Shown: in pieces, positions 2,450 through 61,974 of the stretch
Layout: each line of letters opens with the position of its first letter
Numbering within the stretch: position 1 is the stretch's first letter
Assembly: GCF_020745735.1 (NCBI RefSeq)
Contig: NC_083403.1
Coordinates: forward strand, 125,072,526 to 125,136,525
DNA length: 64,000 nucleotides
Direction: 5' to 3'
DNA from: Hemiscyllium ocellatum
Taxonomy: Eukaryota
Notes under the pieces: generated by a model
The model's database searches: none
What the model was told of the DNA's origin: nothing
Seen by the model: the letters and a program-made list of their open reading frames with translations, nothing else
Position numbers and translations under genes: made by a program

Positions 2450-2784
2450 GGAGAAAGTGAAGTCTGCAGATGCTCGAGATCAAAGCTGAAAATGTGTTGC
2501 TGGAAAAGCGCAGCAGGTCAGGCAGCATCCAAGGAACAGGAGATTCGACGTTTCGGGCATAAGCCCTTCTTCAGGAATTGAGGAGAAAATGAGGTCTGCA
2601 GATGCTGGAGATCAGAGCCGAAAATGTGTTGCTGGAAAAGCGCAGCAGGTCAGGCAGTATCCAAGGAACAGGAGATTCGACGTTTCGGGCATAAGCCCTT
2701 CTTCAGGCTTATGCCCGAAACGTCGAATCTCCTGTTCCTTGGATGCTGCCTGACCTGCTGCGCTTTTCCAGCAACACATTTTCA
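2450..2784 (-). mobile_element. Hammerhead-bearing short element (family A): two tandem 132-bp units plus an inverted arm
   Basis: Units start at 2449 and 2581; inverted partial copy 2706-2784. 16-bp TSD catgcatRaactgcaa at 2434-2449 and 2783-2798. Confidence 0.85.
2543..2578 (-). ncRNA. Minimal type I hammerhead ribozyme
   Basis: Minus strand: AUUC CUGAAGA A GGGC-UUAU-GCCC GAAA CG UC^GAAU. Helix I AUUC/GAAU, palindromic ACGU helix III. Confidence 0.82.
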
Positions 2785-3209
2785 TGCATAAACTGCAATC
2801 AAGTTGACATGTCATCTAAAAGCTAGCATGCCCACTGTAGGACATGTAACATTTACAATGGTGCCGCATCAAGTGTTACCCTGAGGTCAAGGATAATGGA
2901 ACAGTGGAGATGAAGCAAGTTTGCATATGGTTTAGACATCAACTCTAAATATTTGCGAACATGAAATTTGGCTTTACAATGAATGACAGAGGGGTGAATA
3001 AATTCCTCTCTTATCATTCCTGAAGTTGCTTGAACAATATCTGAATATTTTTAATGATTTGACTTCTCAATTCATTATGTTTTGACCATATGATAAAGAG
3101 AAAGGTAGACAGATCTCAAGCTAACCAACATGTATGAAAATGATATTAATCGTCCTCTACAATCTTTGCTGGTTAGTCTGACAGATCTGGTATCATATTT
3201 ATACTCGTC

Positions 3210-6200
3210 GAATCATGGAGCCATAGAGTATTAGAGTCCTACAGCATGGAGACAGGGCCTTGTGCCCAAATTGGTTCATGCCAACCAAAATGTCAATCCA
3301 TGCTAACCTCATTTCTCTGCACTTGGATATCCTTCTAAACTTTTCTGATCCATGTATTTGTCCAAATGCCTTTTAGTTGTCATTAATGAACCCTCTAAAC
3401 CACACAACATTTTTGTACCCTCTTCAAAATCTCCACATCTTCTGGTCGTGTGACAACAGATGTGGCTGAACTAAAATTCAGCACAGCTGCAATATGATAC
3501 TAATTTTTATGTTCTATGTCCTGACCAATGAAGGCAAGCATGCTATATGCCTTCCTGATCACCATATCCACTCAGGTTGTCACTTTCAGGAACTGTGGAC
3601 TTATAGGTATAGATTCATCTCTATGTTGATGCTACTAAGAGTTCTGCCATTTACTGTATATTTCCCCCTGTATTAGATTAGATTCCCTACAGTGTGGAAA
3701 CAGGCCACAGACAGTCACCTGAGGCTGGACTTGAACCTGCGATCTGGGTGCTGTGAGTCATCATGCCACCCCATCTGCATTATGCAGCCCATATGTTCCA
3801 AAACAAATCACCTTGCTTATACCCAGGTTAAACTTCATCTGCCATTTCTCTGCCCACATCTCCAGCCTATCTCTATTCTACTGTACCCTCTGGTAGTCCT
3901 CCTCATGATCCGCAGATCCCCCAATTTTTGCAAGCTTACTAATCAGGCCATCTACATCCTTCCTCCATATCATTTGTATATATTACAAACAACAGGGATG
4001 CCAGCACTAATGCTTGTGGAACACCACGGGTCACAGATATCCAGTCAGAAAAATGCCCTTTTTCCACTACTCTCTGTCTTCTATGACTAACCCAGTTCTG
4101 TATCCATCTTACCAGCTCATCATGGATCTTACGTGACTTCACCTTTTGAATCAGCCTGGCAGGAGGGATCTTGTCAAAGGTCTTGCTAAAGTCCATATGG
4201 ACAACATCGACCAACCTGCCCTCGTCAATCATTTTTTTCACTTCCTTAAAAACACTCAATCAAGTTTGTGAGATGCGACCTCCTCTACACAAAGGCATGC
4301 TGTTTGTTGCTAATAAATCCTTCATTTTCCAAATGTCAGTAAATCCTATTCCTAAGAATCTTCTCAAATAATTTCCCAACCACTGACGTAAGTTTCAACG
4401 GCCTGTAATTTCCTGGATTATCCCTATTGCTATTCTTAAACAAAGGGACAACATTGGCTATTCTCCAATCCTCTAGGATCGCTTTTGTACCGAAAGAGGA
4501 TACAACGATTTCATACAAAGCTCCAGTAATTTCTTCACCTGCTCCTTCAGCATTCTGGGATAAATCCCCGAAGGGCTTGTCTACCTTTATGCTTTCTGAA
4601 ATACTGAACGCCTCCTACTTTTTTATATTATCATATGCTAGAATATCAACATACCCTCCTCTGACTCACCATCCACCATGTCCTTCTCCACCAATGCAAA
4701 TATTCATTCAGGACCTCACCCATTTCCTCCAGTTCCATGCATAACTTGCATCCTTTGTCCTTGAGTTGGCCTACCCTTTCACCCACTACCCTTAAACTCC
4801 TTATGTGTGTTTTAAAATGCCTTGATATTTTCTTTAATCTTGTTTGTCAAACACATTTCATGATCCATTTTAGCCCTTATAATTCCTTGTTTGAGTTCTT
4901 TTCTGCTATCATTTTACTCTTTGAGAACTTTATCTGTCTTATTTTTCCTAAACCTTATATGTTCCTTCTTTTTCTTTTTGATTAAGCTCTCAATTTCTTG
5001 TGTTATGCAAAGTTCCTGAATCTTGCCATCCTTATTCTTCATTTTCACAGGAACACGCTGTTCCCAAAATCTAATCAACTGACCTTTAAAAAATTCCCAT
5101 ATGCCAGGTGTGAATTTACCCTCAAACAACCACCCCCATCTACATTTCCCAGTTCCTGCCTAATATTGTGGTTGTTGCATTCTCCCACTTTAGTACTTTC
5201 AACAAAAAACTGATCTTATCCTTATCTATAAGTTACTTAAAACTTACAGAATTCCCCTGTTGGATTATTTGTATACTGTTTCAAAAGACTATCCTGGACA
5301 CACCGAACAAATTCTTTCCCAACCAAGCCCTTGCAACTTAGGGAGTCCCCACCAATACAGGGAAATTAAAATCACTCACCATAACAGCCCTTTTTCTTTG
5401 CATTTTTTCCATAATCTGTCACATATCTGTTCCCCTGTCACCCACTGGCTGTTGGGAGGCCTGGAGTACAATCCCATTAAGTTTCTATCTGGGCTCTACC
5501 CATCTGATCTTGCTGGATTAGCCCACCAAGGTATCCTCCTTTAGTATAGCTGTGATATTCTCCCTTATTAGTTACCCAACTCTCCCACCTCTTTTAAGCC
5601 ACTTTTTATCTTGCCTGAAATGTTTAAACCTTGGAATGTTAAGCTGCCAGTCTTGTCCCTCTCTCAACCAAGTCTCTGTAATAGCACAACACCATAATTA
5701 CCTGTCTTAATCCAACCTCTAAATTCATCTGCCTTACCTGTCACACTCCTCACATTAAAACAAGTGCACCTCGGGTTGCTGGCCTTGTCATGTTCAGTAA
5801 CCTCTCCCCGTCTATTTTTCCTTCCAGCCTTACTGGCCTTTGTCTCTGACTCCTCCTCAGGCACTTTACTTGCTGGACTACTGCTCTAGCTCCTGCCTCC
5901 TTCACCCCCCACCCCAATCCCGCGTCACCTTAGTTTAAACCCTCCCAGATGGCACAAGCAAATCTCCCTGCCAGCATATTGATGCCTCTCCAATTTAGGC
6001 ATAACCTGTTCCTCCTATCCTGGAAAATATCCCAATGATGCACGAACCTGAAGTCCTCCCTCCTACACCAGTTCTTTAGCTGCACATTTAACTGTACTAT
6101 CTTCCTATTCCTAGCCTCACTGGCACATAGCACAGAACATAATCTCAAGAATACAGGTCCACAGTCCTGATTTTCAACTTCCTACTTAACCCCATGAACT

Positions 6201-6230
6201 CTCTTTGCAAGACCTCATCTTTCTTCCTGC
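3210..6230 (-). mobile_element. Degenerate CR1 LINE (ORF1 esterase end, ORF2 fragments), SINE fragment inserted at about 3673-3770
   Basis: ORF fragments DWRIANVVPLFK..GNYRP, DFSKTFDKIP, WCRREDFRF. Confidence 0.88.
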
Positions 6231-8045
6231 TGACGGGAGTAAGCTATCCTAGTTCTGGATTAGTGGTGCTGGAAGAGCACAGCAGCTCAGGAAATATCCA
6301 CGGAGCAGCGAAATCGACGTTTCGGGCAAAATGACTGATGAAGGGCTTTTGCCCGAAACGTCGATTTCGCTGCTCCATGGATGCTGCCTGAACTGCTGTG
6401 CTCTTCCAGCATCACTAATCCAGAATCTGGTTTCCAGCATCTTTAGTCATTGTTTTTACCTCGCAAGCTATCCTAGATCTGGTCCTGTGTAATGAGATAG
6501 GAATAATTAATGGCCTTATAGTTAGGGATCCTCTTGGAAGGAGTGATCACAGTATGGTTGAATTTAGAATACCCATGGAGAGTGTGAAAATAAAATCCAA
6601 TACCAGGGTCCTGTGCTTAAACAAGGGAGCCTACAATAGAATGAGGGACGATTTGGCTAAAGTAGTCAGGAAACAAAGATTGTACAGTGGGACAGTTGAC
6701 GAGCACTAGACGACTTTCAAAGCAATTTTTCAAAGAGCTCAGCAAAAGTGTATTCCATTGAAAAGGAAGGACTGTAAGAAAAGGGGTAATCTTCCATGGT
6801 TATCTAAGGAAATAAGGAAGGGTATCAAATTGAAAGAGAAGGCATACAAAGTGGCCAAAAACAGCATGAAACGAGAAGATTGGGAAAACTTTAAAGGTGC
6901 ACAGAAAGCCACAAAAAGAGCTATAAAGAAAAGTAAGAGACTCTATGACATGAGAAAAAAACTAGCACCGAATATAAAGACAGATAGCAAAAGTTTCTGT
7001 AAATATATAAAATGAAAAAGAGTGGCTAAAGTAAGCATTGGTCCTTTAGAGGATGAGAAGAGGCATTTAGCTATGGGATATGAGGAAATGGCCAATGCAT
7101 TGAACAGGTATTTTATATTGGTCTTCACAGTGGAGGATACTAATAACACCCCAGTAATTGACAAAAGACAGAGGAAGGTGTCGACCTGGAAACAATCCTT
7201 ATTACAGAAGACATAATGTTGGGCAAGCTAATGGAGCTAAGAATGGACAGATGCAGCATGGATTCATGAAGGGTAGTTCATGCTTAACAAATCTTTTGGA
7301 ATTCTATGAAGGCATTATAAGCAAGGTGAACAATGGGGACCCAGTGGATGTGGTGTACCTAGATTTCCAAAAGCCCTTCGACAAGGTGCCACACAAGAGG
7401 CTGCTGCACAAGATAAGGATGCATGGCAAAGTATTAGCATAATAAGGGATTGGTTGACTAGCAGGACAATTTTTATCGAGATGCCTTGCTACTTCTTCTT
7501 TGATAATAGACTTAAGCATCTTCCCCACTACAGAGGTTAAGCTAACCAGTCTATACTTCCCCATCTTTTGTCAAACTCACTTTTTAAGCAGTAGCATCAC
7601 ATTTGCTGTTTTCCAATCTGCTGGGATTGCCCCAGAGTCCAGTGAATTTTGGAAAATTACCACCAGTGCACTTGCTATTTCTCCCATCATCCTTTTTAAT
7701 ACCCTAGAAAAGGGGTAATCTTCCATGGTTATCTAAGGAAATAAGGAAGGGTATCAAATTGAAAGAGAAGGCATACAAAGTGGCCAAAAACAGCATGAAA
7801 CGAGAAGATTGGGAAAACTTTAAAGGTGCACAGAAAGCCACAAAAAGAGCTATAAAGAAAAGTAAGAGACTCTATGACATGAGAAAAAAACTAGCACCGA
7901 ATATAAAGACAGATAGCAAAAGTTTCTGTAAATATATAAAATGAAAAAGAGTGGCTAAAGTAAGCATTGGTCCTTTAGAGGATGAGAAGAGGCATTTAGC
8001 CAGGAGACTTGTCCATTCTTAGCTCCATTAGCTTGCTCCCCATCA
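6230..8045. mobile_element. Rearranged CR1 ORF2 fragment (deletion, inversion, 295-bp duplication)
   Basis: Plus-strand RT pieces, inverted block 7463-7705, and 6777-7071 repeated at 7706-8000. Confidence 0.85.
6253..6464 (+). mobile_element. Fold-back hammerhead element (family A variant) inserted in a CR1
   Basis: Inverted arms. Core CTGATGA AGGGC TTTT GCCC GAAACGTC at 6335-6362. TSD aagctatcctag at 6241-6252 and 6465-6476. Confidence 0.82.
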
Positions 8046-11940: not shown

Positions 11941-12258
11941 CGGGCGGCACGGTGGCACAGTGGTTAGCACTGCTGCCTCACAGCGCCTGTAGACCCGGGT
12001 TAAATTCCCGACTCAGGCAACTGACTGTGTGGAGTTTGCACGTTCTCCCCGTGTCTGCGTGGGTTTCCTCCGGGTGCTCCGGTTTCCTCTCACAGTCACA
12101 AAGATGTGCGGGTCAGGTGAATTGGCCAAGCTAAATTGCCCCTAGTGTTAGGTAAGGGGTAAATGTAGGGGTATGGGTGGGTTGCGCTTCGGTGGGTCGG
12201 TGTGGACTTGTTGGGCCGAAGGGCCTGTTTCCACACTGTAAGTCTAATCTAATCTAAT
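11941..12258 (+). mobile_element. HE1/V-SINE-like tRNA-derived SINE, full length
   Basis: A/B-box head ggcacggtggcacagtggttagcactgctgcctcacagcgcc, V-type core ttctccccgtgtctgcgtgggtttcctccggg, (ctaat)n tail. Confidence 0.88.
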
Positions 12259-12702
12259 ATCAAACATTGGCACCGCAGCATAAAATGGTTGGCATGGGCA
12301 GGCAGATGAGAATGAGATGGCCATCTTTTTCAGAAAGACTCTGTTGAAAAGGCAAGAAGGCAGTGTGTACTTTTGGAGGGAGGATGGTGTGCTCTGTGTG
12401 TATTGCCCACACAAGTTATTTGCTCTCCTTGATTCCCCCCCAGTCGTGCCTTCAAAAACCCATCCACGATTCTCCTCCCAATGTCCCCAATCTCTGTTGT
12501 GCCTGAAAGGTTGGAATGACTTTAAATCAATACTCATTGTTCTTTTCCCAACCTAGAAATAACACCAGTGAGATTAGGCATTGTTTGCCTGTCTCTCGCC
12601 TGCTTACGGCTGACCATAGTGAATTATAATTTTAGGACAGCTGTGTTCCACATCACACGATGCAGCACTGAATTTTCCTTCTGGTGTTGGACAAGTAGTA
12701 TA

Positions 12703-12936
12703 CAAAGTCGAAGAGTGTGGCGCTGGAAAAGCACAGCCAGTCAGGCAGCATCCAAGGAGCAGGAGAATTGACATTTCGAGCATAAGCCCTTCATCAGGAA
12801 TGAGGGGTGGCTGATGAAGAACGTATGCTTGAAACATCGATTCTCCTGCTCCTCGGATGCTGCCTGACTGGCTGTGCTTTTCTAGCACCACAGTCTTTGA
12901 CACTGATCTCCAGCATCTGCAGTCCTTACTTCCTCC
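12703..12936. mobile_element. Older fold-back hammerhead element (family A), cores decayed
   Basis: Inverted arms homologous to 2450-2784, with CTGATGA remnants on both strands. Degenerate TSD aagYagtat. Confidence 0.75.
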
Positions 12937-13119
12937 AAGCAGTATGTAGTCACCCCTTCTGCAAATTTAAGCCCTGGTCTCTTCTAATGTCCTCAGAGAG
13001 ATAAGGGAAAGGTAAATCAAATATTGCCTCATCTAAAAGCACGTTTGCCTTGGAATAATATTTAAACTACAGCTTGTAGATTTCTGTGCAAAATCAAACT
13101 CAAAATATCATCTTTTTCA

Positions 13120-20600: not shown

Positions 20601-21795
20601 AAGGAGGTGGACGAGGGTAAAGCAGTAGATGTGGTGTATATGGATTTTAGTAAGGCATTTGATAAGGTTCCCCATGGTAGGCTACTGCAAATATACGGAG
20701 GTATGGCATTGAGGGGGAGTTGGAGGTTTGGATTAGGAATTGGCTGGCTGGAAGAAGACAGAGGGTGATAGTTGATGGTAAAAGGTTCATCTTGGAGTGC
20801 AGTTACCAGCGTTGTTCTGAAAGGATGTGTTTTGGGACCATTGCTGTTTGTCATTTTTATAAATTACCTGGAGGAGGGGCTAGAAGGTTGGGTGAGCAAG
20901 TTTGCAGATGATACGAAAGTCGGTGAAGTTGTTGATAGTGAGGAAGGATGTGGCAGGTTACAGCGAGATATAGATAAGCTGCAGAGCTGGGCAGAAAGGT
21001 GGCAAATGGAGTTCAATGTAGCTAAGTGTGAAGTGATTCACTTTGGTAAGAGTAACAAGAAGATGGAGTACTGGGCTAATGGTCGGATACTTGGTAGTGT
21101 GGATGAGCAGAGGGATCTTGGTGTCCATGTACACAGATCTCTGAAAGTTGCCACCCAGGTAAATAGTGCTGTGAAGACAGCATATGGCGTATTGGCTTTT
21201 ATTGGTAGAGGAACTGAGTTCCGGAGTCCTGAGGTCATGTTGCAGTTGCATAAGACTCTGGTGCGGCCGCATCTGGAGTATTGTGTGCAGTTTTGGTCAC
21301 CATATTATAGGAAGGATGTGGAGGCACTGGAATGGGTGCAAAGGAGGTTTACCAGGATGTTGCCTGGTATGGTAGGAAGATCGTATGAGGAAAGGCTGAG
21401 GCACTTGGGGCTGTTTTCTTTGGAGAAAAGAAGGTTTGGGGTGACTTGATAGAGGTGTACAAGATGATTAGGGGTTTAGATAGGGTTGACCATGAGAACC
21501 TTTTTCCACGTACGGAGTCAGATATTACGAGGGGGCATAGCTTTAAATTAAGGGGTGGTAGGTATAGGACTGATGTTAGGGGTAGATTCTTTACTCAGCG
21601 AGTCGTGAGTTCATGGAATGCCCTGCCAGTAACAGTGGTGGACTCTCCCTCTTTATGGGCATTTAAACGGGCATTGGATAGGCATATGGAGGATAATGGG
21701 CTAGTGTAGGTTAGGTGGGCTTGGATTGGCGCAACATCGAGGGCCGAAGGGCCTGTACTGCACTGTATTTTTCTAAGGTCTATATTCTATGTTCT
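17625..21795 (+). mobile_element. Near full-length CR1 (HER1-like) LINE in CMPK2 intron 3, antisense to the gene, inactivated
   Basis: 5'UTR, ORF1 from 17940, ORF2 APE endonuclease + RT (QHGF, YMDFSKAFDKVPH, FADD) broken by stops and frameshifts, and a (tatgttc)-type tail. Confidence 0.93.
17940..18761 (+). pseudogene. CR1 ORF1p: zinc finger, coiled coil, SGNH/GDSL esterase
   Basis: CSSC...CRKC, heptad LQDRVRELELELDEL, IGDS, HVGTND. The DGVH motif lies just past a premature TGA. Confidence 0.88.
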
Positions 21796-25512: not shown

Positions 25513-25719
25513 AGGTTAAATTTTTTAAAAGCATGATGACTTAATTTACTAATTTGTTATTCTTAAGGAAATTATTTAAATCTATTTTATTGATTTAATC
25601 ACTCCACAACACTGCTAGGATAGTCAAGATCAGTCTGATGAGACTTAAGACTTAAACTTCAGAAGGTTTAGTTACACTACATTAATGGAAGTAGCTCCTT
25701 AAATGGTTGACTGCCTGGT

Positions 25720-25844
25720 GAAGGGCTAATGCTCGAAACGTCGAATTCCCTATTCCTGAGATGCTGCCTGGCCTGCTGTGCTTTGACCAGCAACACATTT
25801 TCAGCTGTGATCTCCAGCATCTGCAGACCTCATTTTTTACTTAC
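25720..25844 (+). mobile_element. Family A monomer, 5'-truncated within the hammerhead core (CMPK2 intron 2)
   Basis: gaagggctaatgctcgaaacgtcgaatt...ctgcagacctc. 12-bp TSD tgactgcctggt at 25708-25719 and 25845-25856. Confidence 0.8.
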
Positions 25845-25869
25845 TGACTGCCTGGTCTGCCCATTGGGT

Positions 25870-26120
25870 GCCTTGGGTGACTGTCTGTGTGGAGTTTGCA
25901 CATTCTCCCCGTGTCTGCGTGGGTTTCACCCGAGTGCTCTCATTTCCTCCCACAGTCTAAAGACGTGCAGGTCAGGTGAATTATCCATGGTAAATTGCCC
26001 GATAGTGTTCAGTGCACTATTCGGAGAGAAAGGGGTCTCGGTGGGTTACTCTTCGGAGGGTCGGTATGGACGTGTTGGGCCAAAGGGCCTGTTTCCACAC
26101 TGTAGGTAATCTAACCTAAT
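25870..26120 (+). mobile_element. HE1-like SINE, head missing
   Basis: Core and tail homologous to 11941-12258. Confidence 0.8.
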
Positions 26121-39544: not shown

Positions 39545-42360
39545 GCACAGTTAGAAACAGGAGAGAAGTCACCATGTTGGGAGTTTTCTATAGGCCTCCG
39601 AATAGTCCCAAAGATGTAGAGGAGAGGATAGCAAAGATGATTCTCGATAGGAGTGAGAGAGGCAGGGTAGTTGTCATAGGGGACTTCAACTATCCAAATA
39701 TTGACTGGGATCACCTACGAGTACTATAGATGGGTCAACTTTTGTCCAATGTTTGCAGGAGGGCTGCCTGACACAGTATGTAGACAGGCCTACAAGGGGT
39801 GAAGCCACTTTAGATTTAGTACTGGGTAACGAGCCTGGCCAGGTGGTAGATTTGGAAGTAGGTGAGCACTTTGGAGACAGCGATCACAATTCTGTCAGGT
39901 TTTCTTTAATCATGGAAAGGGATAGGTGTACTCCACCGAGCAAGAGTTACAGCTGGGGGAAGGGAAATCACGATGCAATTAGGAAAGATTTAGGAAGTGT
40001 AGAATGGGGAAGGAAACTGTAGGGGATGAGCACATTGTGTGCGGCACGGTGACACAGTGGTTAGCACTGCTGCCTCACAGTGCCAGAGATCCGGGTTCAA
40101 TTCCCGACTCAGGCGACAGACTGTGTGGAGTTTGCACATTCTCCCCGTGTCTGCGTGGGTTTCCTCCGGGTACTCCAGTTTCCTCCCATAGTCCAAAGAT
40201 GTGCAGGTCAGGTGAATTGGCCACGTTAAATTGTGTTAGATAAGGGGTATGGGTGGGTGGCGGGTTGGTGTGGACTTGTTGGGCTGAAGGGTCTTTTCCA
40301 CACTGTAAGTAATGTAATCTAAAAATGTGGAGCTTATTCAAGAAAAAGCTCCTGTGTGTCCGAGATAAGTATGTACCTGTCAGGCAGGGAGGAAGATATG
40401 GAACACGTGAGCCGTGGTTTACTAAGGAAGTGGAATCCCTGGTCAAGAAGAAGAAGGCTTATGTTAGGACAAAATGTGAAAACTCAGTTAGGGCGCTTGA
40501 GGGTTACAAAGAAGTCAGGAAAGACCTAAAAAGAGATCACAGAAGAGCCAGGAGGAGACATGAGAAGTTGTTGGTGAATAGGATCAGGGTTAACCAGGAA
40601 TAAAAGAATGACGAGAGTTAAATTAGGGCCAATCAATGATAATAGTGGGAAGTTGTGCGTGGAGTCAGAGGAGATAGGGGAAGCACTAAATAAATATTTT
40701 TCGACAGTGTTCACTATAGAAAATGAAAATGTTGGCGAGAAAGATACAGAGATACTTGCATCTAGACTAGAAGAGATTGAAGTTCGCAAAGAAGAGGTAT
40801 TAGAAATATGCAGAATATGAAAATAGACAAGTCCCCTGGGCCAGATGGGATCTATCCTAGGATCCTCTGGGAAGCAAGGGAAGAGACTGCCGAGCCTTTG
40901 GCATTGATCTTCAAATCATCATTGTCTACTGGAATAGTGCCTGAGGACTGGAGGATAGTAAATGTGGTTCCCTTGTTCAAAAAGAGTAGTAGAGACAACC
41001 CTGGTAATTACAGACCAGTGAGTCTCACTTCAGTTGTTGGTAAAGTGTTGGAAAAGGTTATAAGAGATAGGATTTATAACCATCTAGAAAAGATTAATCT
41101 GATCAGGGACAGTCAGCACGGTTTTGTGAAGGGTAGGTAATGCCTAACGAATCTTATTGAGTTTTTTGACAAAGTTACCGAATAGATAGATGAGAGTAAA
41201 CCGGTTGATGTGGTGTATATGGATTTCAGCAAGGCGTTCGATAAGGTTCCCCACAGTAGGCTATTATACAAAATGTGGAGGAATGGAATTGTGGGAGACA
41301 TAGCAGTTTGGATCAGTAATTGGCTTGCTGAAAGAAAACAGAGTGTTGCAGTTGATGGAACATGTTCATCTTGGTGTCCAGTTACTAGCGGCGTACCACA
41401 AGGATTGGTGTTGGGTCCACTGCTGTTCAGTATTTTTATAAATGACCTGGATGAGGGCTTTGAAGGGTGGGTTAGTAAATTTGCGGACAACAATAAGGTC
41501 GGTGGAGTTGTGGACAGTGACGAAGGATGTAGTAGGTTGCAGAGAGACATAGATAAGCTGCAGAGCTTGGCTGACAGGTGGCAAATGAAGTTTAATGTGG
41601 ACAAGTGTGAGGTGATACACTTTGAACAGAGTAATCGGAATTCTTGGGACTGCAGATGAGCAGAGAGATCTCGGTGTCCATGTACACATTTCCCTGAAAG
41701 TTGCCACCCAGATTGACAGGGTTGTTAAGAAGGCATACAGTGTTTTGGCCTTTATTAATAGAAGGATTGAGTTCCGGAACCAGGAGGTTATGCTGCAGCT
41801 GTACAAAGCTCTGGTACAGCCACACTTGGAGTATTGTGTACAGTTCTGGTCACCGCATTATAAGAAGGATGTGGAAGCTTTGGAAAGGGTGCAGAGGAGA
41901 TTTACTAGGATGTTGTCTGGTATGGAAGGAATATCTTACGAGGAAAGGCTGAGGGCCTTGAGGCTGTTCTTGTTAGAAGAAAGTTGAGAGGTGACTTAAC
42001 AGAGACATATAAGATAATCAGAGGGTTAGATAGGATGGACAGGGAGAGCCTTTTTCCAAGTATGGGGACGGCAAATACGAGGGGACACAACTTTAAAGTG
42101 AAGGGAGATAGGTATAAGACAGATGTCAGAGGCAGTTTCTTTACTCAAAGAGTAGTTAGGGTATGGAATGCTTTGCCTGCAACAGTAGTAGATTCGCCAA
42201 GTTTAAGTGCATTTAAGTCATCATTGGACAGGGAAATGGACGTACATGGAATAGTGTAGGTGGGATGGGCTTCAGATTAGTATAACAGGGCAGCAGCAAC
42301 ATCGAGGGCCAAAGGGCTGGTACTGCGCTGTAATGTTCTATGTTCTATGTTCTACATTCT
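39545..42360 (+). mobile_element. 5'-truncated CR1 LINE with nested SINE
   Basis: APE and RT fragments, (tatgttc)n tail at about 42331-42360. Confidence 0.92.
40040..40322 (+). mobile_element. HE1-like SINE nested in CR1
   Basis: Interrupts CR1 ORF2 sequence; has head, core and tail. Confidence 0.88.
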
Positions 42361-43192: not shown

Positions 43193-43495
43193 GATTAGAT
43201 TAGATTAACAGTGTGGAAACAGGCCCTTCGGCCCAACAAGTCCACACCGACCCACCGAAGTGCAACTCACCCATACCCCTACATTTACCCCTTACCTAAC
43301 ACTACGGGCAATTTAGCATGGCTACTTCACCTGACCCGCACATCTTTGGACTGTGGGAGGAAACCAGAGGAAACCCACGCAGACACGGGGAGAACGTGCA
43401 AACTCCACACAGTCAGTCGCCTGAGTCAGGAATTGAACCCGGGTCTCAGGCGCTGTGAGGCAGCAGTGCTAGCCACTGTGCCACCGTGCCACCCA
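43193..43495 (-). mobile_element. HE1-like SINE
   Basis: Reverse complement of the same family. Confidence 0.88.
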
Positions 43496-43679
43496 ATGTG
43501 CTTTACTGTTCTATGTTCTATCTATGATGGAACTTCTGCCAACTCTGCAAAATTCTGATTGTTGTCTCCAATCCCCTGCCATTTTCAGGCAATTATTAAT
43601 ATTGAAAAGAGAAAGTGCTGGAGAAACTCAGCAGGTCTTGCAGCATCAGTGGAGAGAAAATAGACTTAAAGGTATGACT

Positions 43680-44702: not shown

Positions 44703-44797
44703 GCTTTCGATTTCTGTTCTAATGAAGTGAAACTTTGAACGAAGCATGGTCTGAGTGATTACTAGTCATCCCGGTTACGTCAGAGACAGTATATATA
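44703..44797 (+). promoter_or_regulatory. RSAD2 promoter: ISRE, IRF-E, CRE-like element, TATA box
   Basis: GCTTTCGATTTC (=GAAATCGAAAGC) 44703-44714, GAAGTGAAACT 44724-44734, TTACGTCA 44775-44782 and TATATATA 44790-44797, about 80 nt before the ATG. Confidence 0.8.
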
Positions 44798-44874
44798 CAC
44801 CTAACCATCAACAATCTGTACAACCCTTGTTAGGAACACATTCCGAGTTAGCTGTGGTCAGGAGGGGAAAAAAA

Positions 44875-45178
44875 ATGTACGTGGTGGTTATTTGCATTAA
44901 ACTCCTGCTGCAAGCTTGTATTGACAAAGCGGGCGAAATCTCGCGCTGGTTGATGAGGCTGGTAACCTTGAGTCAATGTGGGCTCATTGAGTGGAGACGG
45001 GGAAGAGTCACAAGCAGCGATGGGACCCAAGAGCGGAGTGTGGTCCCCACCAGTGTCAACTATCATTTCACTCGGCAATGTAACTACAAGTGCGGCTTCT
45101 GTTTCCACACCGCCAAGTCATCATTTGTGTTGCCCCTGGAAGAAGCCAAAAGGGGACTAGAGCTACTAAAGGCAGCCG
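44875..45178 (+). CDS. RSAD2: RSAD2/viperin coding exon 1
   Basis: Hydrophobic N-terminal helix [13 protein letters not shown]..., then [24 protein letters not shown] (radical SAM CxxxCxxC). Donor G|GTAAGC. Confidence 0.96.
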
Positions 45179-45324
45179 GTAAGCAAGCAGCGGAATTAGG
45201 TTTTTGCAGGAGAAAGTTCAATTTCTCTTGGTTCAGAATGATGTTGTGGCTGCCCATTACCCGTTCAAAATTAATTGGGAGAGAATGCTGTTCTAATATA
45301 AGGGTTTTTAAAAATGATTTTAAA

Positions 45325-45456
45325 TAAAACTAAATGACCTGCGGATGCTGGAAATCAGAAACACAAACAGAAATTGCTGGAAAAGCTCAGCAAGTCCAGC
45401 AGCATCTGTGGAGAGAAATCAGAGTTAATGTTTCGGGTCCAGTGACCCTCAGAATT
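45325..45456 (-). mobile_element. Older related short element with decayed hammerhead (relatives near 27138-27228, 43605-43680, 46360-46560, 48620-48715)
   Basis: Shared gctggaRaaactcagcaggtc...gcagcatc...ggagaga body. The minus strand reads ctga-gggtc-actg-gaccc-gaaacatt with part of the core deleted. Confidence 0.6.
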
Positions 45457-45984
45457 GTTACTTACACCTTTTACAATTCACTTCTCTGGAGATGTTTTGG
45501 ATACAAGTCACAGTTGTTTATTTTGCATGATTGTAGGGATCTTATTAAAGTCGCTCATTGACATGGAACAATGCTCAGGTACAATGGGCAAAAACACAAA
45601 GTAGCATTGCTAATGCTGATATGCAATAGGGAGAAAAGAGATAGGGTGGAGAGTGTTCGACCAAATAGAGGAAACGATCGGTTGCAGCCAGCCATTGACA
45701 CACAATGTAATGTTTGGGTCTGGGATATTATTACTACAATGTGAGTAGTGGTGCATTGTGGTAGGGATACCTCTGGACTAGGAGGTCCAAATTCAGGTCC
45801 CACCTGCACAAGAACTCTGTCATTACAGTTTGAATAGCTTGATTAAAATATTCAGAAATATTTTCAGCTGAAGATGGACCATTGCTTCAAGAAATGTTAG
45901 TCTTTGCTCAGTGCTGCAGTTACTGGGAGCACCCACTCACCACACATTTGCAAAGTTTATTTTTCAAGTGTTTTAATATGGAAA

Positions 45985-46290
45985 TGTTGTGGTTCTGTTC
46001 GCCGAGCTGGAAGTTTTTGCTGCAAACGTTTCGTTCCCTGGCTAGGGAACATCATCAGTGCTATTGGAGCCTCCTGTGAAGCGCTGCTTTGATGTTTCTT
46101 CCGGTATTTATAGTGGTTTGTTCTTGCCGCTTCCGGGTGTCAGTTTCAGCTGTAGTGGTTTGTATGTGGGGTCCAGGTCGATGTGTCTGTTGATGGATGT
46201 TCTTAGAAACGTTTGCAGCAAAAACTTCCAGCTCGGCGAACAGAACCACAACAACGGACACCCGAGCTACAAATCTTCAACCAGACTTTA
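45985..46290 (-). mobile_element. Penelope-like element 3' fragment with terminal repeat, hammerhead and inverted arm (RSAD2 intron 1)
   Basis: Minus strand 46197-46108 reads SINRHIDLDPTYKPL...*, resembling the Penelope ORF C-terminus. Inverted arms about 45985-46032 and 46207-46254. TSD aatatggaaatg at 45975-45986 and 46291-46302. Confidence 0.8.
46022..46061 (-). ncRNA. Minimal hammerhead ribozyme, family C (Penelope terminal repeat)
   Basis: Minus strand: GCA CUGAUGA U GUUCCCU-AGCC-AGGGAAC GAAA CG UU^UGC. 7-bp helix II, palindromic AACGUU. Confidence 0.82.
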
Positions 46291-46894
46291 AATATGGAAA
46301 TGGAGTAATAGCGGTTCCAAACATTGCAGAAACGGAATGTTGGGAAATCTATTAACATACAAAAACAGGAAGTGCTGGAGAAGATCATCAGGTCTAGCTG
46401 CATCAGTGGAGAGAAGACCGTGTGAGCGTTTGGAGTCCAATGCCCCTTAGGTCAAAACTTTAACTATGTTTCTCTTTCCATGGATGCTGCCAAACCTGCT
46501 GAGTTTCTCCAGCAATTTCTGTTTTTATTTCAGATCTTCAGCAAAACTCAGTTCTTTGTTTTATTTGAAATTTCCATTTTGTTTTATTTAGCTACTGAAC
46601 TGGGAGGCTCACAAAAAATAATCTTTCCTCAAATATTCCTGTTAAGTATCTCATAGTTATGTAGACCAATTAATAATATTAATAAACCAATTCAGTGATC
46701 TTGCCACACTTCCAGAGGCATATTGACAGAAATACCTTCAGTGCCCATATACTTTAACCATATTGTTTATGTTCTGAAATCTGATTCCTATTTTCTAAAT
46801 ATGCTGTTCGACAAAAGTTTGGCAAGATTTTGTTAATTAACTGTTGGCATCTCATGATTCGATGCAAAACATTCCATTTGTCTTTCTTGCCTAG

Positions 46895-47056
46895 GTATGG
46901 AGAAAATTAACTTTTCAGGAGGAGAACCTTTTCTGGTCAATCGTGGAGAGTTTCTAGGGAAGCTGGTTCAGTACTGCAAGCAGGAGTTGAAACTGGCCAG
47001 TGTCAGCGTTGTGAGCAATGGGAGTCGGATCACCGAAAAGTGGTTTAAAAACTATG
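46895..47056 (+). CDS. RSAD2: RSAD2 coding exon 2 (162 nt)
   Basis: [13 protein letters not shown]...VSVVSNGS...WFKNYG (GGE motif). AG/GT boundaries. Confidence 0.97.
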
Positions 47057-47460
47057 GTAATATACCAATATCCAGGTCTGGGAATGGATTGTGCCTATCC
47101 ATACATTCTAATTAATCACTGTTGAGAGGAGTTAAGCTAATATGTATGTATAGATGAAATATTGCGACATCACACATTTCATAATTATTCGGTTTGATGT
47201 GTAATTAAGCCACAGACTAAGAAACTGGATGTAACATTAAATACCTAATATTTTCTTTGTTGAGTATTAAGGGCTACTCACAACAAAACCCAGCAGGATA
47301 CTAGTTTGTTCAACACTGGAGAAAATGTATTCGGGTGGAATACTTGATAAGGATATGTTAACATAACTAGGGGCAAAATGTCTTTCTTGAATCCTTTCAT
47401 TCAACAGTTTGAAAACTGAAATGTGTTTGAAAATGAATCCTTAATTTCATTATACTACAT

Positions 47461-47720
47461 TTAGATTAGATTAAATTAGATTAGATTAGATTACTTAGTG
47501 TGGAAACAGGCCCTTCGGCCCAACAAGTCCACACCGACCCACCGAAGCGCAACCCATCCAGACCCATTCCCCTTACATTTACCCCTTCATCTAAAACTAC
47601 GGGCAATTTAGCATGGCCAATTCACCTAACCTGCACATTTTTGGACTGCGGGAGGAAACCAGAGCACCCGGAGGAAACCCACACAGACACGGGGAGAATG
47701 TGCAAACTCCACACTGTCAG
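47461..47720 (-). mobile_element. HE1-like SINE (5'-truncated) in RSAD2 intron 2
   Basis: (ttaga)n tail at 47461-47495 and core. Confidence 0.87.
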
Positions 47721-48074
47721 TTACAACCCAATTAAAATATTCATTAATATCAGACCAAGTGCTCTGTTACATATTATACAATGAACTTTGAATCTATCTA
47801 AATGATTCCCTACTTAGGGGGCTCATAGTTTTACTGAGATAGTTAAAGAGCTGCCAACTATAGATGAGGAACCTTGTCTAAACTAAATAAAATTCCCAAT
47901 CAGTTTGATGGCAGTGCAAAGATTGTACAGTCCAGAAGAATTTTTTTTTGCAACATAATGCCAGGTAGTTTTTTTCTAAACAGTTATGCTGCACGCAAAA
48001 TTCGCAATTGTTATTAATCAGTTGTTAAACTATAACTGGAGCTCACTGTTTAACATAAAACATTAATGTTACAG

Positions 48075-48304
48075 GTAAGGACCTGGACATTTTGGCTATT
48101 TCATGTGACAGTTTTGAAGAGGACACCAATCGTCTCATCGGCCGTGGGCAGGGGACCAAAAATCACATCGAGAACCTCCTCAAAGTCAGAAGTTGGTGCA
48201 AAGATTACCAAGTGGCTTTTAAAATCAACTCTGTCATCAACAGATTCAATGTTGATGAGGATATGAATGAACAAATCAGGATGATAAATCCAATAAGGTG
48301 GAAG
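48075..48304 (+). CDS. RSAD2: RSAD2 coding exon 3 (230 nt)
   Basis: [13 protein letters not shown]...IGRGQG...[12 protein letters not shown]...NPIRWK. Donor AAG|GTAATT. Confidence 0.96.
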
Positions 48305-49736
48305 GTAATTCCGTTACTTCACCTTCCCTCTATTCTAAACTATAACCATTTGTAGGAACATGGAGGATAAGGGAAAGAACTCAAATGTGACTGTGCTGGA
48401 GAAAATTGCTATTTTGACTGGCCCAAAATCCTAAACTAGCAGACAAAGGTACTGTTTCTGCTCACTTGACATTTGGAAAAACTATTTGTATACATGTCTT
48501 GACAGTATATGTCTATCAGCTTTCTAGGGAGTTCTTAGCTGTTTAATCTGGTAGACTAAGTATAGAGCATCGCCTGAGAGCAACAATGATCTCATTGTTG
48601 CCATCAGAACAATGGCTTACAAAAGAGCTGGAGAAACTCAGCAGGTCAAGCCCCATTTTTGGAGAGACAAACTGAGTTAGCATTTCGAATTCTGTACACC
48701 TCATTTTCAAAACTGAAATTGTCTTTATTAGTCACAGTAACAAACATGGCAGTTGGGAAGACCTTTTTTTTAAAAAAAATAGCCTTCTTGAGTATACATT
48801 TTGGTTACAACTGGTTATGATTTCTTCTTGTTTCAGCTGAAGACTGGGTGGAACTTTCAAACTAAATTAATATGCCTTTAATATAGGTAATGTGATTAGC
48901 TTAACTTTGGAGAATGGAACAATTTATGTCCATAGTATTCAGTGGATTGTCTCTATTGTAGGTTTGAATATTAGTGGCTTTGTGAAAAACTAGTTACTTC
49001 AAGTCTTAGAATTTGAGCTGTGCTCTGTTTATTTAGTGGTGATCATTCTGGAGGTCTATTTTTGGTAATTTCCCCAATCTAGCAATGAGAATGTGTAAAT
49101 ATTTCATTAAAAGTAAAAAAAAAACACATGAAACCAGCAAAGGAAACAAAATTTCACTTAGAATTAACTTTATTGTGCTTTTATGGAAATCTGCACCATA
49201 CAATATATACATTTTAGACAAAAATGGCAAGGTATAGGTAATTTCAGAAGATTCTGCAGTCAGCTGTGGTGATCATGGAAACATCAAATGCTGAATGATA
49301 AGTACATCCTAGCCTCAATGTGCTCTGAATGATAATGCTGAATTGTGGTGATAATATTGTGGCTGATGGCTCACTGCATTCTCCTCCTGCTTCTGAGACT
49401 TTTCAAGTCCTGCTGAAAATGTTTGAATGTATTAGGCATTTCTCCTTTCTCTGTGGTTGGAAGGATGAAAGTGTGTGAAATTTGTGTTTTTTGTCAATTT
49501 TGGATTAAATCTTGGATTCAAGTGCACAGCAGCATACACTCAAAATGTATCACTAACTGACAATATTAAGGTAGTTTTACTCAGTTCAGCCTCATGAAGA
49601 GCTGGCATGGGAAGTACGATAAAAAATACATTATGCATAAATGCATGATCTCTCAGGCAACTGGACAACATGAGTAGGTATGATTGTGATAGCAAGTATA
49701 GTATTTTGAGTATTAAAATTATTTTCTTCAAAATAG

Positions 49737-49886
49737 GTATTCCAATGTTTGTTGATCGAAGGCGAAAATGCTGGAGAAGAAGCTCTGAGACATGCAGAAA
49801 CATTTATTATCAGCAGTAAAGACTTTCAGAGATTTTTGGATAGACATAAGGAAATCAAGTGCCTTGTGCCTGAATCTAATGAGAAG
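49737..49886 (+). CDS. RSAD2: RSAD2 coding exon 4 (150 nt)
   Basis: [18 protein letters not shown]...CLVPESNEK. Donor AAG|GTGAGA. Confidence 0.96.
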
Positions 49887-49930
49887 GTGAGATATATGGG
49901 AATAGATACTGAACCAGGTATATATATTTG

Positions 49931-50217
49931 TGGGCGGCACGGTGGCTAGCACTGCTGCCTCACAGTGCTAGAAACCCGGGTTCAATTCCCACCTCAGGCA
50001 ACTGTCTGTGTGGAGTTTGCACATTCTCCCTGTGTCTGCATGGGTTTGCTCTGGTTTCCTCCCACAGTCCAAAAATGTGCAGGTTAGGTGAACTGGCTGT
50101 GCTAAATTGCCCGTACTGTTAGGTGTAGGAGAATGGGTCTGGGTGGGTTGCTGTTCGGAGGGGCTGTGTGGACTTGTTGGGCCAAAGGGCCTGTTTCCAC
50201 ACTGTAAGTAATCTAAT
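49931..50217 (+). mobile_element. HE1-like SINE in RSAD2 intron 4
   Basis: Head, core and tail; 45 nt after the exon 4 donor. Confidence 0.87.
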
Positions 50218-51494
50218 CATATCACTTGAGCAGCAGGATTACATGAGGGAAACTGCTTCAGTTTTCCTTTATGATCAGATTCCATTCTCTGTGAAAATTA
50301 TTCATTTCAACACATCTGCTGTCACAGATTAAGCTTTTGTCTTCACTACTGTCAGTTACCAGTCAGCATGTTGCAGGATGTGACAGCTGCAGTCACATCT
50401 GGGACCCAAGTCCATCATTATACTGTCAAGAAAAATGCATCTCTAAGTTTGAAGGTCTGACTGCATACTTCTGTGAATTCAAATAAACACAATGAAACAC
50501 ATTAAGAACTTGTATCGCACTTAACATGATAAAGCACATCATAGAGGTTCACAGCAGCAATGTAAACCATACATACAAAAGCATACAAAGGGTGAGATTG
50601 GGACAGATTACCATATACTTAGTCAAATAGATGGGTTTTAAGTGGTACTTCAAGAATGAGAGTGACAGAGAAATTTCGGGGGCAAATTCCAGAGTTTAGT
50701 GCTTGTGTAGCTAAAGGTACAGTCATCAATGATATATTAAAATCATGGATGCTCAAGAGGTTAGAATTACAGGTAAGTAGTTATGGTATGAGAGAGGTGG
50801 ATTACATGTTTTCTGCAGCAAACCTATGAATCAAGCTGCATTTCCTTCCCAGTGCTAGGGTTCAGGACATCTGCTTGAGACTGGGCAAGAATTTGTAGTT
50901 GGAGGAGGATCCAGTTGCAGTGCTCCATATAAGTACTAATGACCTCGGCAGAACAAATAAGGAGTTTCTGCAAAGTCAGTATTAGAAGCTAGGTGCAATA
51001 TTAAAAAGCAGAAACTCAAAAGTCATCCTGTCTTGACTATGACCTTAGCATTGTACAATTTAGGTATTCTTTTTATTTTCTCAGAGGCTTGCGGTTTTAT
51101 GAAAAAGGCAGTGGAAACAGAGTCCTGGAAGATTTTTAAGGCACAACTAGATGGACTCCTCTTAAGTAAGGAGGTGAAAAGTTATCAGGACAGGTGACAG
51201 TGCAGAGTGGAGGTCAAAATCAGATTAGCCATTTTCTTATTGAATGACAGACCAAGCTTGAGGGGCTAAATTCCTTCTCAGAATTTCTTCTCTCATAAGC
51301 TAATGAATCTTTGGAGTTGTTTACTGCTGAAGACTGACAAGGTTGGTTCAGTAATTATGTTCATGGTTGAAATCAGCAGATTTTTAATAAGTAAGGGAAT
51401 CAAGGGTTATGGGAAAAACAAGTACAAAAGTGAAGTGGGTTATCAGATCAACCGTGATCTCATCGAGTAGTTGAGCTGACTGTTGGGGTGAATG

Positions 51495-51590
51495 CGGGGC
51501 TGAAAATGTGTTGCTGGTTAAAGCACAGCAGGTCAGGCAGCATCCAAGGAACAGGAAATTCGACGTTTCGGGCCAGAGCCCTTCATCAGG
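51495..51590 (-). mobile_element. Family A hammerhead element in RSAD2 intron 4 (antisense to the gene)
   Basis: Core CUGAUGA A GGGC-UCUG-GCCC GAAACGUC intact, helix I 5' strand truncated. 13-bp TSD gttggggtgaatg at 51482-51494 and 51591-51603. Confidence 0.83.

Positions 51591-61940: not shown

Positions 61941-61974
<34 letters not shown>

What the first reader, a model, noticed from the sequence alone, without database searches (positions are those of the whole stretch)
2450..51590. Dispersed family of short mobile elements built around a minimal hammerhead ribozyme (Penelope-driven retrozyme-like system)
Seen: at least 8 insertions of an approximately 130-bp element (2450, 6253, 12703, 25720, 34591, 36343, 36824, 51495). 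One end folds as a type I hammerhead: helix I AUUC/GAAU, core CUGA(U/A)GA, one extra A, helix II GGGC/GCCC, then GAAA-CG-UC^. The helix II loop varies freely (UUAU, UUUU, UUGU, UCUG, UAAU) while the stem is largely conserved. Five insertions have clear 8-16 bp TSDs. There is no ORF, no tRNA head and no poly(A). Established: Penelope-like elements and animal retrozymes (newt satellite 2, schistosome Sm-alpha) carry minimal hammerheads with a palindromic helix III that cleave as dimers; an extra nucleotide after A9 is tolerated. Inference: this is an abundant non-autonomous ribozyme retroelement mobilised by Penelope RT/GIY-YIG, whose remnants are in this window. I cannot tell from here whether this family has been described.
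Basis: partly seen in the sequence, partly recalled or inferred. Interest (0 to 1): 0.92.

Follow-up and report, generated by a model that had tools for sequence, protein, structure and literature searches.

The report
Penelope-type hammerhead stub insertions, shark-like genome
The window holds eight real insertions of a short repeat that carries a minimal hammerhead ribozyme motif and has the insertion scars typical of Penelope-like retrotransposons; this is a known kind of element, most copies have an incomplete ribozyme, and no Penelope gene lies in the window.

Summary
All eight listed sites carry one family, as 14 copies ("arms"). Six intact minimal hammerhead (HHR) cores occur against 0 expected by chance. 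Five target-site duplications (TSDs) are clear and three are weak.

The anatomy is richer than reported. Five insertions are head-to-head inverted pairs, one of them with an extra tandem copy, and three are solo. Every arm begins within -7 to +13 nt of the CUGAUGA box. Arms end at one of two sites, 59-68 nt or 98-103 nt after the GUC cut site. Each pair has one long and one short arm.

This matches the Penelope-like element (PLE) signature: tandem/inverted copies, a 30-40 nt "tail" at one end, and two internal reverse-transcription start sites (about 55 and 89 nt after the cut in Anolis Poseidon).

PLE mobilisation is therefore well supported. The retrozyme/circular-RNA reading is not, and most copies lack the 5' strand of helix I. 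No PLE RT or GIY-YIG remnant was found; the RT remnants are CR1/L2-like LINEs. Rfam hammerhead models do not match.

This is a new member of a known kind (PLE minimal hammerheads, described in 2014). Interest is moderate to low.

The parts
2450..2782 (.). Insertion I1: two tandem long copies on the - strand (1a 2450-2580, 1b 2581-2707) and an inverted short arm on the + strand (1c 2706-2782). TSD at 2434-2449 and 2783-2798.
   Evidence: The TSD is 16 bp with 1 mismatch. 1a and 1c are 100% identical; 1a and 1b are 95% identical.
6253..6464 (.). Insertion I2: short arm 6253-6331 (-) and long arm 6335-6464 (+). TSD at 6241-6252 and 6465-6476.
   Evidence: The arms are 91% identical. The junction lies in the helix II loop.
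12702..12935 (.). Insertion I3: short arm 12702-12802 (-) and long arm 12811-12935 (+). Weak TSD at 12692-12701 and 12936-12945.
   Evidence: The arms are 80% identical, so this is an old insertion.
25720..25844 (+). Insertion I4: solo long copy. TSD at 25708-25719 and 25845-25856.
   Evidence: The core is mutated to CUGGUGA.
34591..34807 (.). Insertion I5: long arm 34591-34713 (-) and short arm 34712-34807 (+). TSD at 34577-34590 and 34808-34821.
   Evidence: The arms are 95.5% identical.
36344..36581 (.). Insertion I6: short arm 36344-36432 (-) and long arm 36451-36581 (+), with an extra 18-nt hammerhead fragment at the centre. Weak TSD at 36334-36343 and 36582-36591.
   Evidence: The arms are 78% identical.
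36826..36920 (-). Insertion I7: solo short copy with a complete hammerhead (core plus a 5-bp helix I, at 36885-36917). TSD at 36818-36825 and 36921-36928.
51495..51590 (-). Insertion I8: solo short copy with an intact core at 51562-51589 and no 5' strand for helix I. TSD at 51482-51494 and 51591-51603.
2547..2579 (-). Most complete main-family hammerhead: AAUUC, CUGAAGA, A, GGGC-UUAU-GCCC, GAAAC-GUC, then GAAU after the cut.
   Evidence: The minimum-free-energy fold of the isolated 54-nt segment is exactly helix I plus helix II, at -9.1 kcal/mol.
45987..46286 (.). Second hammerhead family, a young PLE-type insertion. The - strand copy has about 145 nt upstream of the hammerhead (46025-46058) and ends at CACAACA. 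The + strand arm (46206-46286) starts at GAAAC and carries a 33-nt tail. TSD at 45971-45986 and 46287-46302.
   Evidence: The two 48-nt arms are 100% complementary.
45339..45438 (-). Older related copy with a decayed hammerhead (helix II GGGUC/GACCC), body and tail.
   Evidence: nhmmer E=1.1e-11; sequence.
46372..46515 (.). Older related inverted pair: 46372-46411 (-) and 46453-46515 (+).
   Evidence: Inverted repeat of 54 nt, 80% complementary.
27140..27218 (-). Older related copy.
   Evidence: nhmmer E=1.5e-06; sequence.
43615..43654 (-). Older related fragment (body only).
   Evidence: nhmmer E=2.1e-05.
48627..48664 (-). Older related fragment (body only).
   Evidence: nhmmer E=0.0095; sequence.

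Best explanation
These are insertions made by the RT/GIY-YIG machinery of a Penelope-like element (PLE), copying a short RNA module. The module is a minimal type I hammerhead, then a body of about 60 nt ending in a small hairpin and an AC-rich stretch (CAACACA), then a tail of about 37 nt.

Shown here:
- Every arm starts within 20 nt of the 5' edge of the hammerhead.
- Every arm ends at one of two discrete sites, S (59-68 nt after GUC) or L (98-103 nt after GUC).
- Each inverted pair has one L arm and one S arm, joined head-to-head at the hammerhead.
- TSDs vary from 8 to 16 bp, and there is no poly(A).

Established for Anolis Poseidon (PMC11167929):
- The PLE protein cuts both DNA strands and extends both.
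- It starts reverse transcription internally at two sites about 34 nt apart (the 'tail'), about 55 and 89 nt after the hammerhead cut site.
- It does not need hammerhead cleavage to insert.

Inferred:
- One nicked strand primed at L and the other at S.
- Both cDNAs ran to the 5' end of the RNA, or to a strong stop at the folded hammerhead.
- They were then joined, often through the palindromic helix II.
- An occasional template switch from the RNA 5' end to a new L site produced the tandem copy in I1.

The hammerhead is a feature of the source RNA. In most genomic copies it is incomplete and decays neutrally. Because all 14 arms stop at the hammerhead, while the second family's copy runs 145 nt further upstream, I lean (about 55:45) to a discrete short non-autonomous template rather than random 5' truncations of an autonomous PLE.
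For: - End mapping: 5' ends lie at -7 to +13. 3' ends lie at 59, 59, 63, 64, 66, 67, 68 nt (short) and 98, 98, 98, 99, 102, 103, 103 nt (long) after the cut.
- All five pairs combine one long and one short arm, and the inverted arm lies on the 5' side of the long copy. These are the PLE hallmarks described in PMC8557442.
- In Anolis Poseidon the cut is at +30, the tail spans +85 to +119, and the main start site lies in ACAACACA at 111-118. The main family here has CAACACA at site S, and the second family ends at CACAACA.
- The second family shows the same tail asymmetry, 33 nt at one end only.
- The hammerhead meets all the minimal-hammerhead features of PMC4209133.
- By direct reading, helix II differs between families yet stays paired: GGGC/GCCC, GUUCCCU/AGGGAAC, GGGUC/GACCC.
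- The LINE 3' tail (GGGCCGAAGGGCC hairpin plus ATTCTATG) and the true LINE-tailed SINE of this genome share nothing with the element.
- Related modules occur in ray and sawfish loci, with weaker matches in stingray and catshark.
Against: - No PLE ORF is present in the window or in the 96 kb of other elasmobranch DNA fetched, so the link to an autonomous partner is indirect.
- In Anolis the AC-rich start site is the distal one; here it is the proximal one.
- There is no statistical covariation for the hammerhead or for the hairpin before site S.
- The whole-unit RNA is no more stable than shuffles, z = -0.2.
- Rfam hammerhead models give no match even at E <= 10.
- Minimal PLE hammerheads cleave poorly in vitro.
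- Three TSDs are within the range expected by chance.
Confidence: 0.72

Rival explanations
1. The copies are dead-on-arrival stubs of an autonomous PLE. On this view the PLE transcript begins, or the RT always stalls, at the hammerhead. RT started at the 5'-proximal S/L sites and produced 95- or 131-bp products. There would be no family of short masters.
For: - Reverse transcription starts internally. In Anolis the template needs RNA up to +172, beyond the L site at +119. Inserted copies would therefore lack downstream sequence needed to be copied again.
- PMC4209133 interprets solo minimal hammerheads as truncated PLEs.
- The frame through GAAACGUC (E-T-S), which is the ORF frame in Anolis, is open through the unit in young copies.
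Against: - All 14 of 14 arms stop at the hammerhead, whereas the second family's copy continues 145 nt upstream.
- The reading frame across the conserved body differs between the main and older families, by direct reading, so the body is not a conserved coding N-terminus.
- An open 43-codon frame is expected by chance about 13% of the time.
Confidence: 0.33
2. One reading: a retrozyme-like element. Tandem units would be transcribed, cut by dimeric hammerheads, circularised, and copied by rolling-circle reverse transcription.
For: - One tandem dimer of 132-bp period exists.
- ACGU at positions 15.1-16.1 is palindromic, as needed for a double hammerhead.
- PLE-derived retrozymes are reported in vertebrates, including one chondrichthyan.
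Against: - Only 1 of 8 insertions is tandem, and its upstream unit lacks the 5' strand of helix I.
- Copy ends never coincide with GUC^G.
- S-initiated copies carry no tail upstream of the hammerhead, which a circular template would give.
- The hammerhead is the minimal variant, not the canonical one with loop-loop contacts, and the unit is below the 170-400 nt range.
- The intended double hammerhead (-17.1 kcal/mol) is not the dimer's minimum-free-energy fold (-22.5 kcal/mol).
Confidence: 0.1
3. A SINE mobilised by the CR1/L2-like LINEs that fill the window.
For: LINE remnants cover at least 15.6 kb of the window. Several insertions lie in or next to LINE fragments.
Against: - There is no tRNA, 5S or 7SL head.
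- The element has no similarity to the LINE 3' tail and no microsatellite end.
- The genuine LINE-tailed SINE of this genome is a different repeat of about 310 bp.
- Two fixed 3' ends 35-40 nt apart, paired in inverted arms, are not a LINE trait.
Confidence: 0.04
4. A MITE or foldback DNA transposon with long terminal inverted repeats. Alternatively, the hammerhead match is a chance motif in a hairpin repeat.
For: Five inserts are long hairpins flanked by direct repeats. They draw sub-threshold miRNA-like Rfam matches.
Against: - TSD length varies from 8 to 16 bp.
- Arms are systematically unequal by 35-40 nt.
- Solo arms and a tandem copy also have TSDs.
- All 13 or more core positions of the hammerhead are satisfied in three sequence-unrelated helix II contexts, against 0 chance hits.
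Confidence: 0.02

Closest known systems
Minimal hammerheads (min-HHR) of metazoan Penelope-like elements (Cervera & de la Pena 2014, PMC4209133)
   Same: - Type I topology with a 4-5 bp helix I.
- One unpaired nucleotide between A9 and 10.1, and a G10.1-C11.1 pair.
- No real helix III, with a palindromic ACGU that implies a dimer.
- Thousands of solo copies per genome, and 'dual motifs close to each other on opposite strands'.
   Different: Here helix II is only 4 bp, against 6-8 bp typically. No flanking PLE ORF is seen. The copies end sharply at the 5' edge of the hammerhead.
Poseidon_Ac (PAc) of Anolis carolinensis: internal RT initiation and the 'tail' (Frangieh et al. 2024, PMC11167929)
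   Same: - GAAACGUC and an extra nucleotide after A9.
- Two 3' end classes about 34-40 nt apart, at comparable distances from the cut: 55 and 89 nt in PAc, 59-68 and 98-103 nt here.
- An AC-rich ACAACA(CA) motif at a start site.
- Both-strand priming, which explains the inverted arms.
   Different: In PAc the AC-rich site is the distal one and the region is the start of the ORF. Here it is the proximal one and the region does not look coding. PAc copies include a 126-nt pLTR upstream of the hammerhead.
Animal non-LTR retrozymes (Cervera & de la Pena 2020, PMC7229834; Li et al. 2026, bioRxiv 10.64898/2026.07.22.740005)
   Same: Non-coding, carries a type I hammerhead, has long TSDs, is presumed PLE-dependent, and occurs in non-mammalian, non-avian vertebrates.
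   Different: Retrozymes are tandem arrays of 170-400 nt units with canonical hammerheads, expressed as circular RNAs. Here the copies are mostly solo or inverted, the unit is 131 nt, and the hammerhead is minimal and mostly incomplete.
Schistosome Sm-alpha and newt satellite 2
   Same: Short non-coding repeats whose hammerheads have a weak helix III and act as dimers.
   Different: Those are units of about 330 bp with full helix I and helix II and loop contacts. There is no evidence here for tandem satellite organisation or for a pol III promoter.

Membership tests
PLE minimal hammerhead (min-HHR) | Conserved core CUGANGA ... GAAA ... U16.1-H17 | tested here: met
   Six exact cores and 9 within 3 mismatches, against 0 by chance.
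PLE minimal hammerhead (min-HHR) | Unpaired nucleotide between A9 and 10.1, and a G10.1-C11.1 pair | tested here: met
   All 6 intact cores have the extra nucleotide (A or U), and helix II starts with G-C.
PLE minimal hammerhead (min-HHR) | Helix III absent or 1 bp, with palindromic positions 15.2-16.2 (acts as a dimer) | tested here: met
   A-CG-U in every intact copy. A 4-bp intermolecular ACGU/ACGU helix is possible.
PLE minimal hammerhead (min-HHR) | Short helix I (4-5 bp) | tested here: inconclusive
   Present in 1a, 3a and I7 only. Overall 52% of cells are paired, because the 5' strand is usually not part of the copy.
PLE minimal hammerhead (min-HHR) | Lies in the pLTR of an element encoding RT and a GIY-YIG endonuclease | tested here: not met
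   No PLE RT or GIY-YIG in the window or in the fetched elasmobranch loci. A genome-wide test is not possible with these tools.
PLE minimal hammerhead (min-HHR) | Self-cleavage after H17 | not testable with these tools
   Needs a transcription and cleavage assay.
PLE insertion signature | Partial tandems and an inverted 5'-truncated copy at the 5' side | tested here: met
   I1 has a tandem copy plus an inverted arm. I2, I3, I5, I6 and the second family are inverted pairs.
PLE insertion signature | A 30-40 bp 'tail' present at one end only, arising from two internal RT start sites | tested here: met
   Long minus short is 35-40 nt in the main family and 33 nt in the second family. All 5 pairs are heterotypic.
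PLE insertion signature | TSDs of variable length, no poly(A) | tested here: met
   TSDs of 8-16 bp. Ends read ...CUCC or ...UUAC.
Non-LTR retrozyme | Tandem array in which every unit has a complete canonical type I hammerhead | tested here: not met
   One dimer only. The hammerhead is the minimal variant, and the upstream unit lacks the 5' strand of helix I.
Non-LTR retrozyme | Expressed as a unit-length circular RNA | not testable with these tools
   No transcriptome data were available. The copy ends argue against a cleaved or circular template.
Rfam hammerhead families (Hammerhead_1, _3, _II, HH9, HH10) | Covariance-model score at or above the gathering threshold | tested here: not met
   No hammerhead match even at E <= 10, either on 64 kb or on an 81-nt slice.
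LINE-dependent SINE | Pol III head and a 3' tail shared with a partner LINE | tested here: not met
   ARAGORN finds nothing. There is no similarity to the CR1-like tail. The real SINE of this genome is a different repeat.

The most novel reading that the evidence does not exclude
The 95/131-nt unit may be a self-sustaining minimal parasite of PLEs, in effect a 'SINE of Penelope'. It would consist only of a minimal hammerhead plus the RT entry module (hairpin, AC-rich site, tail). Its RNA 5' end would sit at the hammerhead, and its architecture would have persisted since before sharks and rays split. If so, it marks the minimal cis-requirements for PLE retrotransposition in vivo.
Probability: 0.3. 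Interest if true: 0.55.

Novelty: new member of a known kind. Interest (0 to 1): 0.3.

Why it matters
The class is established: PLE minimal hammerheads were described in 2014, PLE-derived retrozymes in 2020 and 2026, and internal RT initiation in 2024.

The window adds a clean natural record showing that the two-start-site 'tail' mechanism, demonstrated in vitro for a lizard Poseidon element, also left its mark in a cartilaginous-fish genome. It did so in at least two unrelated hammerhead families.

It also shows that the PLE machinery can lay down copies as short as 95 bp. For annotation, such repeats should be filed under PLE. They are not SINEs, MITEs or microRNA hairpins.

Tried and rejected
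- Rfam at gathering threshold, at E <= 10 on the whole window, and on an 81-nt slice: no hammerhead family matched. The only matches were spurious miRNA-like hits to the hairpins.
- A metagenome scan with a conserved 20-mer returned 17 loci, all chance matches in GC-rich bacterial contigs.
- Exact look-up of 5 window ORFs found none in the collection. A homology search with an ORF spanning an inverted pair found nothing. More copies from the source genome could therefore not be fetched.
- A LINE RT search gave elasmobranch hits. Six fetched loci held only diverged relatives of the module and no PLE ORF.
- Covariation tests on the hammerhead and on the hairpin before site S did not exceed shuffles.
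- The whole-unit fold gave z = -0.2.
- A coding reading of the open E-T-S frame was rejected, because the frame across the conserved body shifts between families.
- A tblastn search with the published Poseidon_Ac protein was not run. Only short-motif scans were done.
- A Mobula locus holds two 410-bp inverted copies containing the module. Whether this is a longer element or a segmental duplication is unresolved.

Full report
CONTEXT. The window has 41% G+C and no N runs. It contains radical-SAM (viperin-like, RSAD2) exons and a CMPK2-like P-loop exon. CR1/L2-like LINE remnants cover at least 15.6 kb. These have a GDSL-esterase ORF1, an APE endonuclease and RVT_1. The best named relatives of the LINE RT come from rays, a sawfish and a catshark. 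I infer that the source is a cartilaginous fish; this was not shown directly.

THE OBSERVATION. blastn of 2450-2580 against the window, and an nhmmer profile, recover the family at all eight listed sites. The hammerhead pattern occurs 9 times within 3 mismatches, against 0 in 100 shuffles. A general minimal-hammerhead descriptor finds six intact cores, against 0 in 200 simulations. The 54-nt segment around 2547-2579(-) folds exactly into helix I plus helix II. Five TSDs of 12-16 bp exceed the 95th percentile of 400 random controls. Three are weak, with 9 matching bases. ARAGORN finds no tRNA, and there is no A-tail.

The eight inserts contain 14 arms:
- I1 has two tandem copies plus an inverted arm.
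- I2, I3, I5 and I6 are head-to-head inverted pairs joined at the hammerhead.
- I4, I7 and I8 are solo.

I mapped each arm against the consensus, taking C3 of CUGAUGA as +1 and the cut as following +28. All 5' ends lie between -7 and +13. The 3' ends fall into two classes. Short arms end 59-68 nt after the cut, just past a small hairpin (UGCUG/CAGCA) and the AC-rich CAACACA. Long arms end 98-103 nt after the cut. Each class has seven arms, and the difference is 35-40 nt. Every pair has one long and one short arm, and the short inverted arm lies on the 5' side of the long copy. In three pairs the short arm begins in the helix II loop, which is a palindrome that could anneal two cDNA ends. That last point is inference.

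COMPARISON WITH PUBLISHED PLE BIOLOGY. PLE insertions are characterised by 5' truncation, partial tandems, an adjacent inverted 5'-truncated copy, and a 30-40 bp tail at one end only (PMC8557442). For Anolis Poseidon, the purified protein cuts and extends both DNA strands. It starts reverse transcription internally at two sites whose spacing is the tail of about 34 nt (+85 to +119; hammerhead cut at +30; main site in ACAACACA at 111-118). It does not need hammerhead cleavage (PMC11167929). The geometry here is very close: 59-68 and 98-103 nt after the cut, against 55 and 89 nt. The hammerhead itself meets each feature listed for metazoan PLE minimal hammerheads, including the unpaired nucleotide after A9, G10.1-C11.1 and the palindromic 15.2-16.2 (PMC4209133). 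That paper also reports solo motifs and dual motifs on opposite strands.

A SECOND FAMILY CONFIRMS THE PATTERN. At 45987-46286 lies an unrelated minimal hammerhead: CUGAUGA, U, a 7-bp helix II, then GAAAC-GUU. It sits in an insertion whose 48-nt arms are 100% complementary. One copy runs about 145 nt upstream of the hammerhead and ends at CACAACA. The inverted arm starts at GAAAC and carries 33 extra nt before the TSD. The perfect arms suggest recent PLE activity in this genome (inference).

Five older, decayed insertions (six arms) of a third, related lineage are also present. Relatives of that lineage occur in Mobula and Pristis loci, and more weakly in Hypanus and Scyliorhinus. Helix II differs between lineages yet remains paired, by direct reading. 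This is the kind of between-family covariation reported in 2014.

WHAT IS NOT SUPPORTED.
- No PLE gene remnant is present. A GIY-YIG regex, fuzzy scans with eight Poseidon motifs, and Pfam on 20 ORFs gave only LINE domains.
- Copies do not conserve the ribozyme preferentially. Identity is 84% in the HHR, 82% in the body and 77% in the tail, and CpG transitions hit GAAACGUC.
- Helix I is paired in only 52% of cells, because its 5' strand is normally outside the copy. No covariation exceeds shuffles. Only two main-family copies are complete ribozymes.
- Rfam hammerhead models do not match.
- The retrozyme model fits poorly. There is one dimer only, the ends never lie at GUC^G, and short copies carry no tail upstream of the hammerhead. 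The unit also lies outside the published size range and ribozyme type.

OTHER RIVALS. The LINE 3' tail (GGGCCGAAGGGCC hairpin plus ATTCTATG) has no similarity to the element. The genuine LINE-tailed SINE of this genome is a separate repeat of about 310 bp. A MITE is excluded by the variable TSD length, the unequal arms, and the solo and tandem copies.

OPEN POINT. I cannot tell whether the 95/131-bp copies come from short non-autonomous masters or are stubs of an autonomous PLE.
- For short masters: all 14 arms stop at the hammerhead, unlike the second family, and subfamilies of different age all keep the same limits (arm identities from 78% to 100%).
- For stubs: internal initiation means copies lack any RNA needed downstream of L.
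- The frame across the conserved body differs between lineages, so the body is not a conserved coding N-terminus.

I could not fetch more of the source genome or run a search with a PLE protein.

VERDICT. This is a real feature, correctly spotted, and correctly tied to Penelope-type mobilisation. It is a new member of a known kind. It is not a retrozyme, and it does not come with PLE remnants in the window.

Noticed in passing
window 44755-55242 (+) and 26114-26392 (-): Exons of a viperin/RSAD2-like radical-SAM gene (motif [10 protein letters not shown], weak Radical_SAM and Fer4_12 matches). A CMPK2-like P-loop exon (VIVIEGLDATGK) lies on the other strand. This is the usual vertebrate CMPK2-RSAD2 neighbourhood. 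The second hammerhead family and several older copies sit in RSAD2 introns.
   Followed up: partly
window 17925-21800 (+) and about 13 other fragments: CR1/L2-like LINE with a GDSL-esterase ORF1, an APE endonuclease and an RT. Its 3' end has a GGGCCGAAGGGCC hairpin followed by ATTCTATG. LINE-like coding remnants cover at least 15.6 kb of the window.
   Followed up: yes
window 11942-12255, 25880-26114, 40034-40320, 43193-43496, 47483-47722, 49933-50218, 53104-53412 (plus a fragment at 3675-3766): A SINE of about 310 bp with a tRNA-like head (GGCAGCACGGTGGCACAATGGTTAGCACTGC...). Its 3' tail matches the CR1-like LINE tail (GGGCCGAAGGGCCTGT...). It is the real LINE-dependent SINE here and is unrelated to the hammerhead element.
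   Followed up: partly
window 36900-38100: CpG-island-like stretch: G+C 57% and CpG observed/expected 0.76, against 0.31 for the whole window. It has long ORFs on both strands and no Pfam match. It may be a promoter or first exon.
   Followed up: partly
window 61656-62224: Tandem array of a 45-bp unit, 12.6 copies at 79% match, with a (CA)n run at 61936-61974. The surrounding region is also CpG-rich.
   Followed up: no
TSDs at 34577-34590, 36818-36825, 51482-51494, 45971-45986: Four of nine TSDs contain or end with GAATG or AAATG (GTGAATG, CCGAATG, GTGAATG, GGAAATG). I7 sits in a LINE-tail-like hairpin (GGCCGAATGGCC). This may be a target preference of the endonuclease.
   Followed up: no
window 34664-34764, 36358-36533, 6307-6372: The inverted pairs draw sub-threshold microRNA-precursor matches in Rfam (33, 32 and 29 bits, far below gathering). 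They are long perfect hairpins that could be misannotated as miRNA genes or could feed small-RNA pathways.
   Followed up: no
L021 (Mobula, OY992610.1) 803-1220 and 3218-3634: Two inverted copies of about 410 bp, 86-88% alike and 2 kb apart. Each contains the hammerhead module with about 170 nt of shared sequence upstream and about 125 nt downstream. This is either a longer element carrying the module or a segmental inverted duplication.
   Followed up: partly
window 36418-36458: The centre of insertion I6 holds an extra 18-nt antisense fragment of the hammerhead between the two arms. It looks like repeated template switching at the ribozyme.
   Followed up: no
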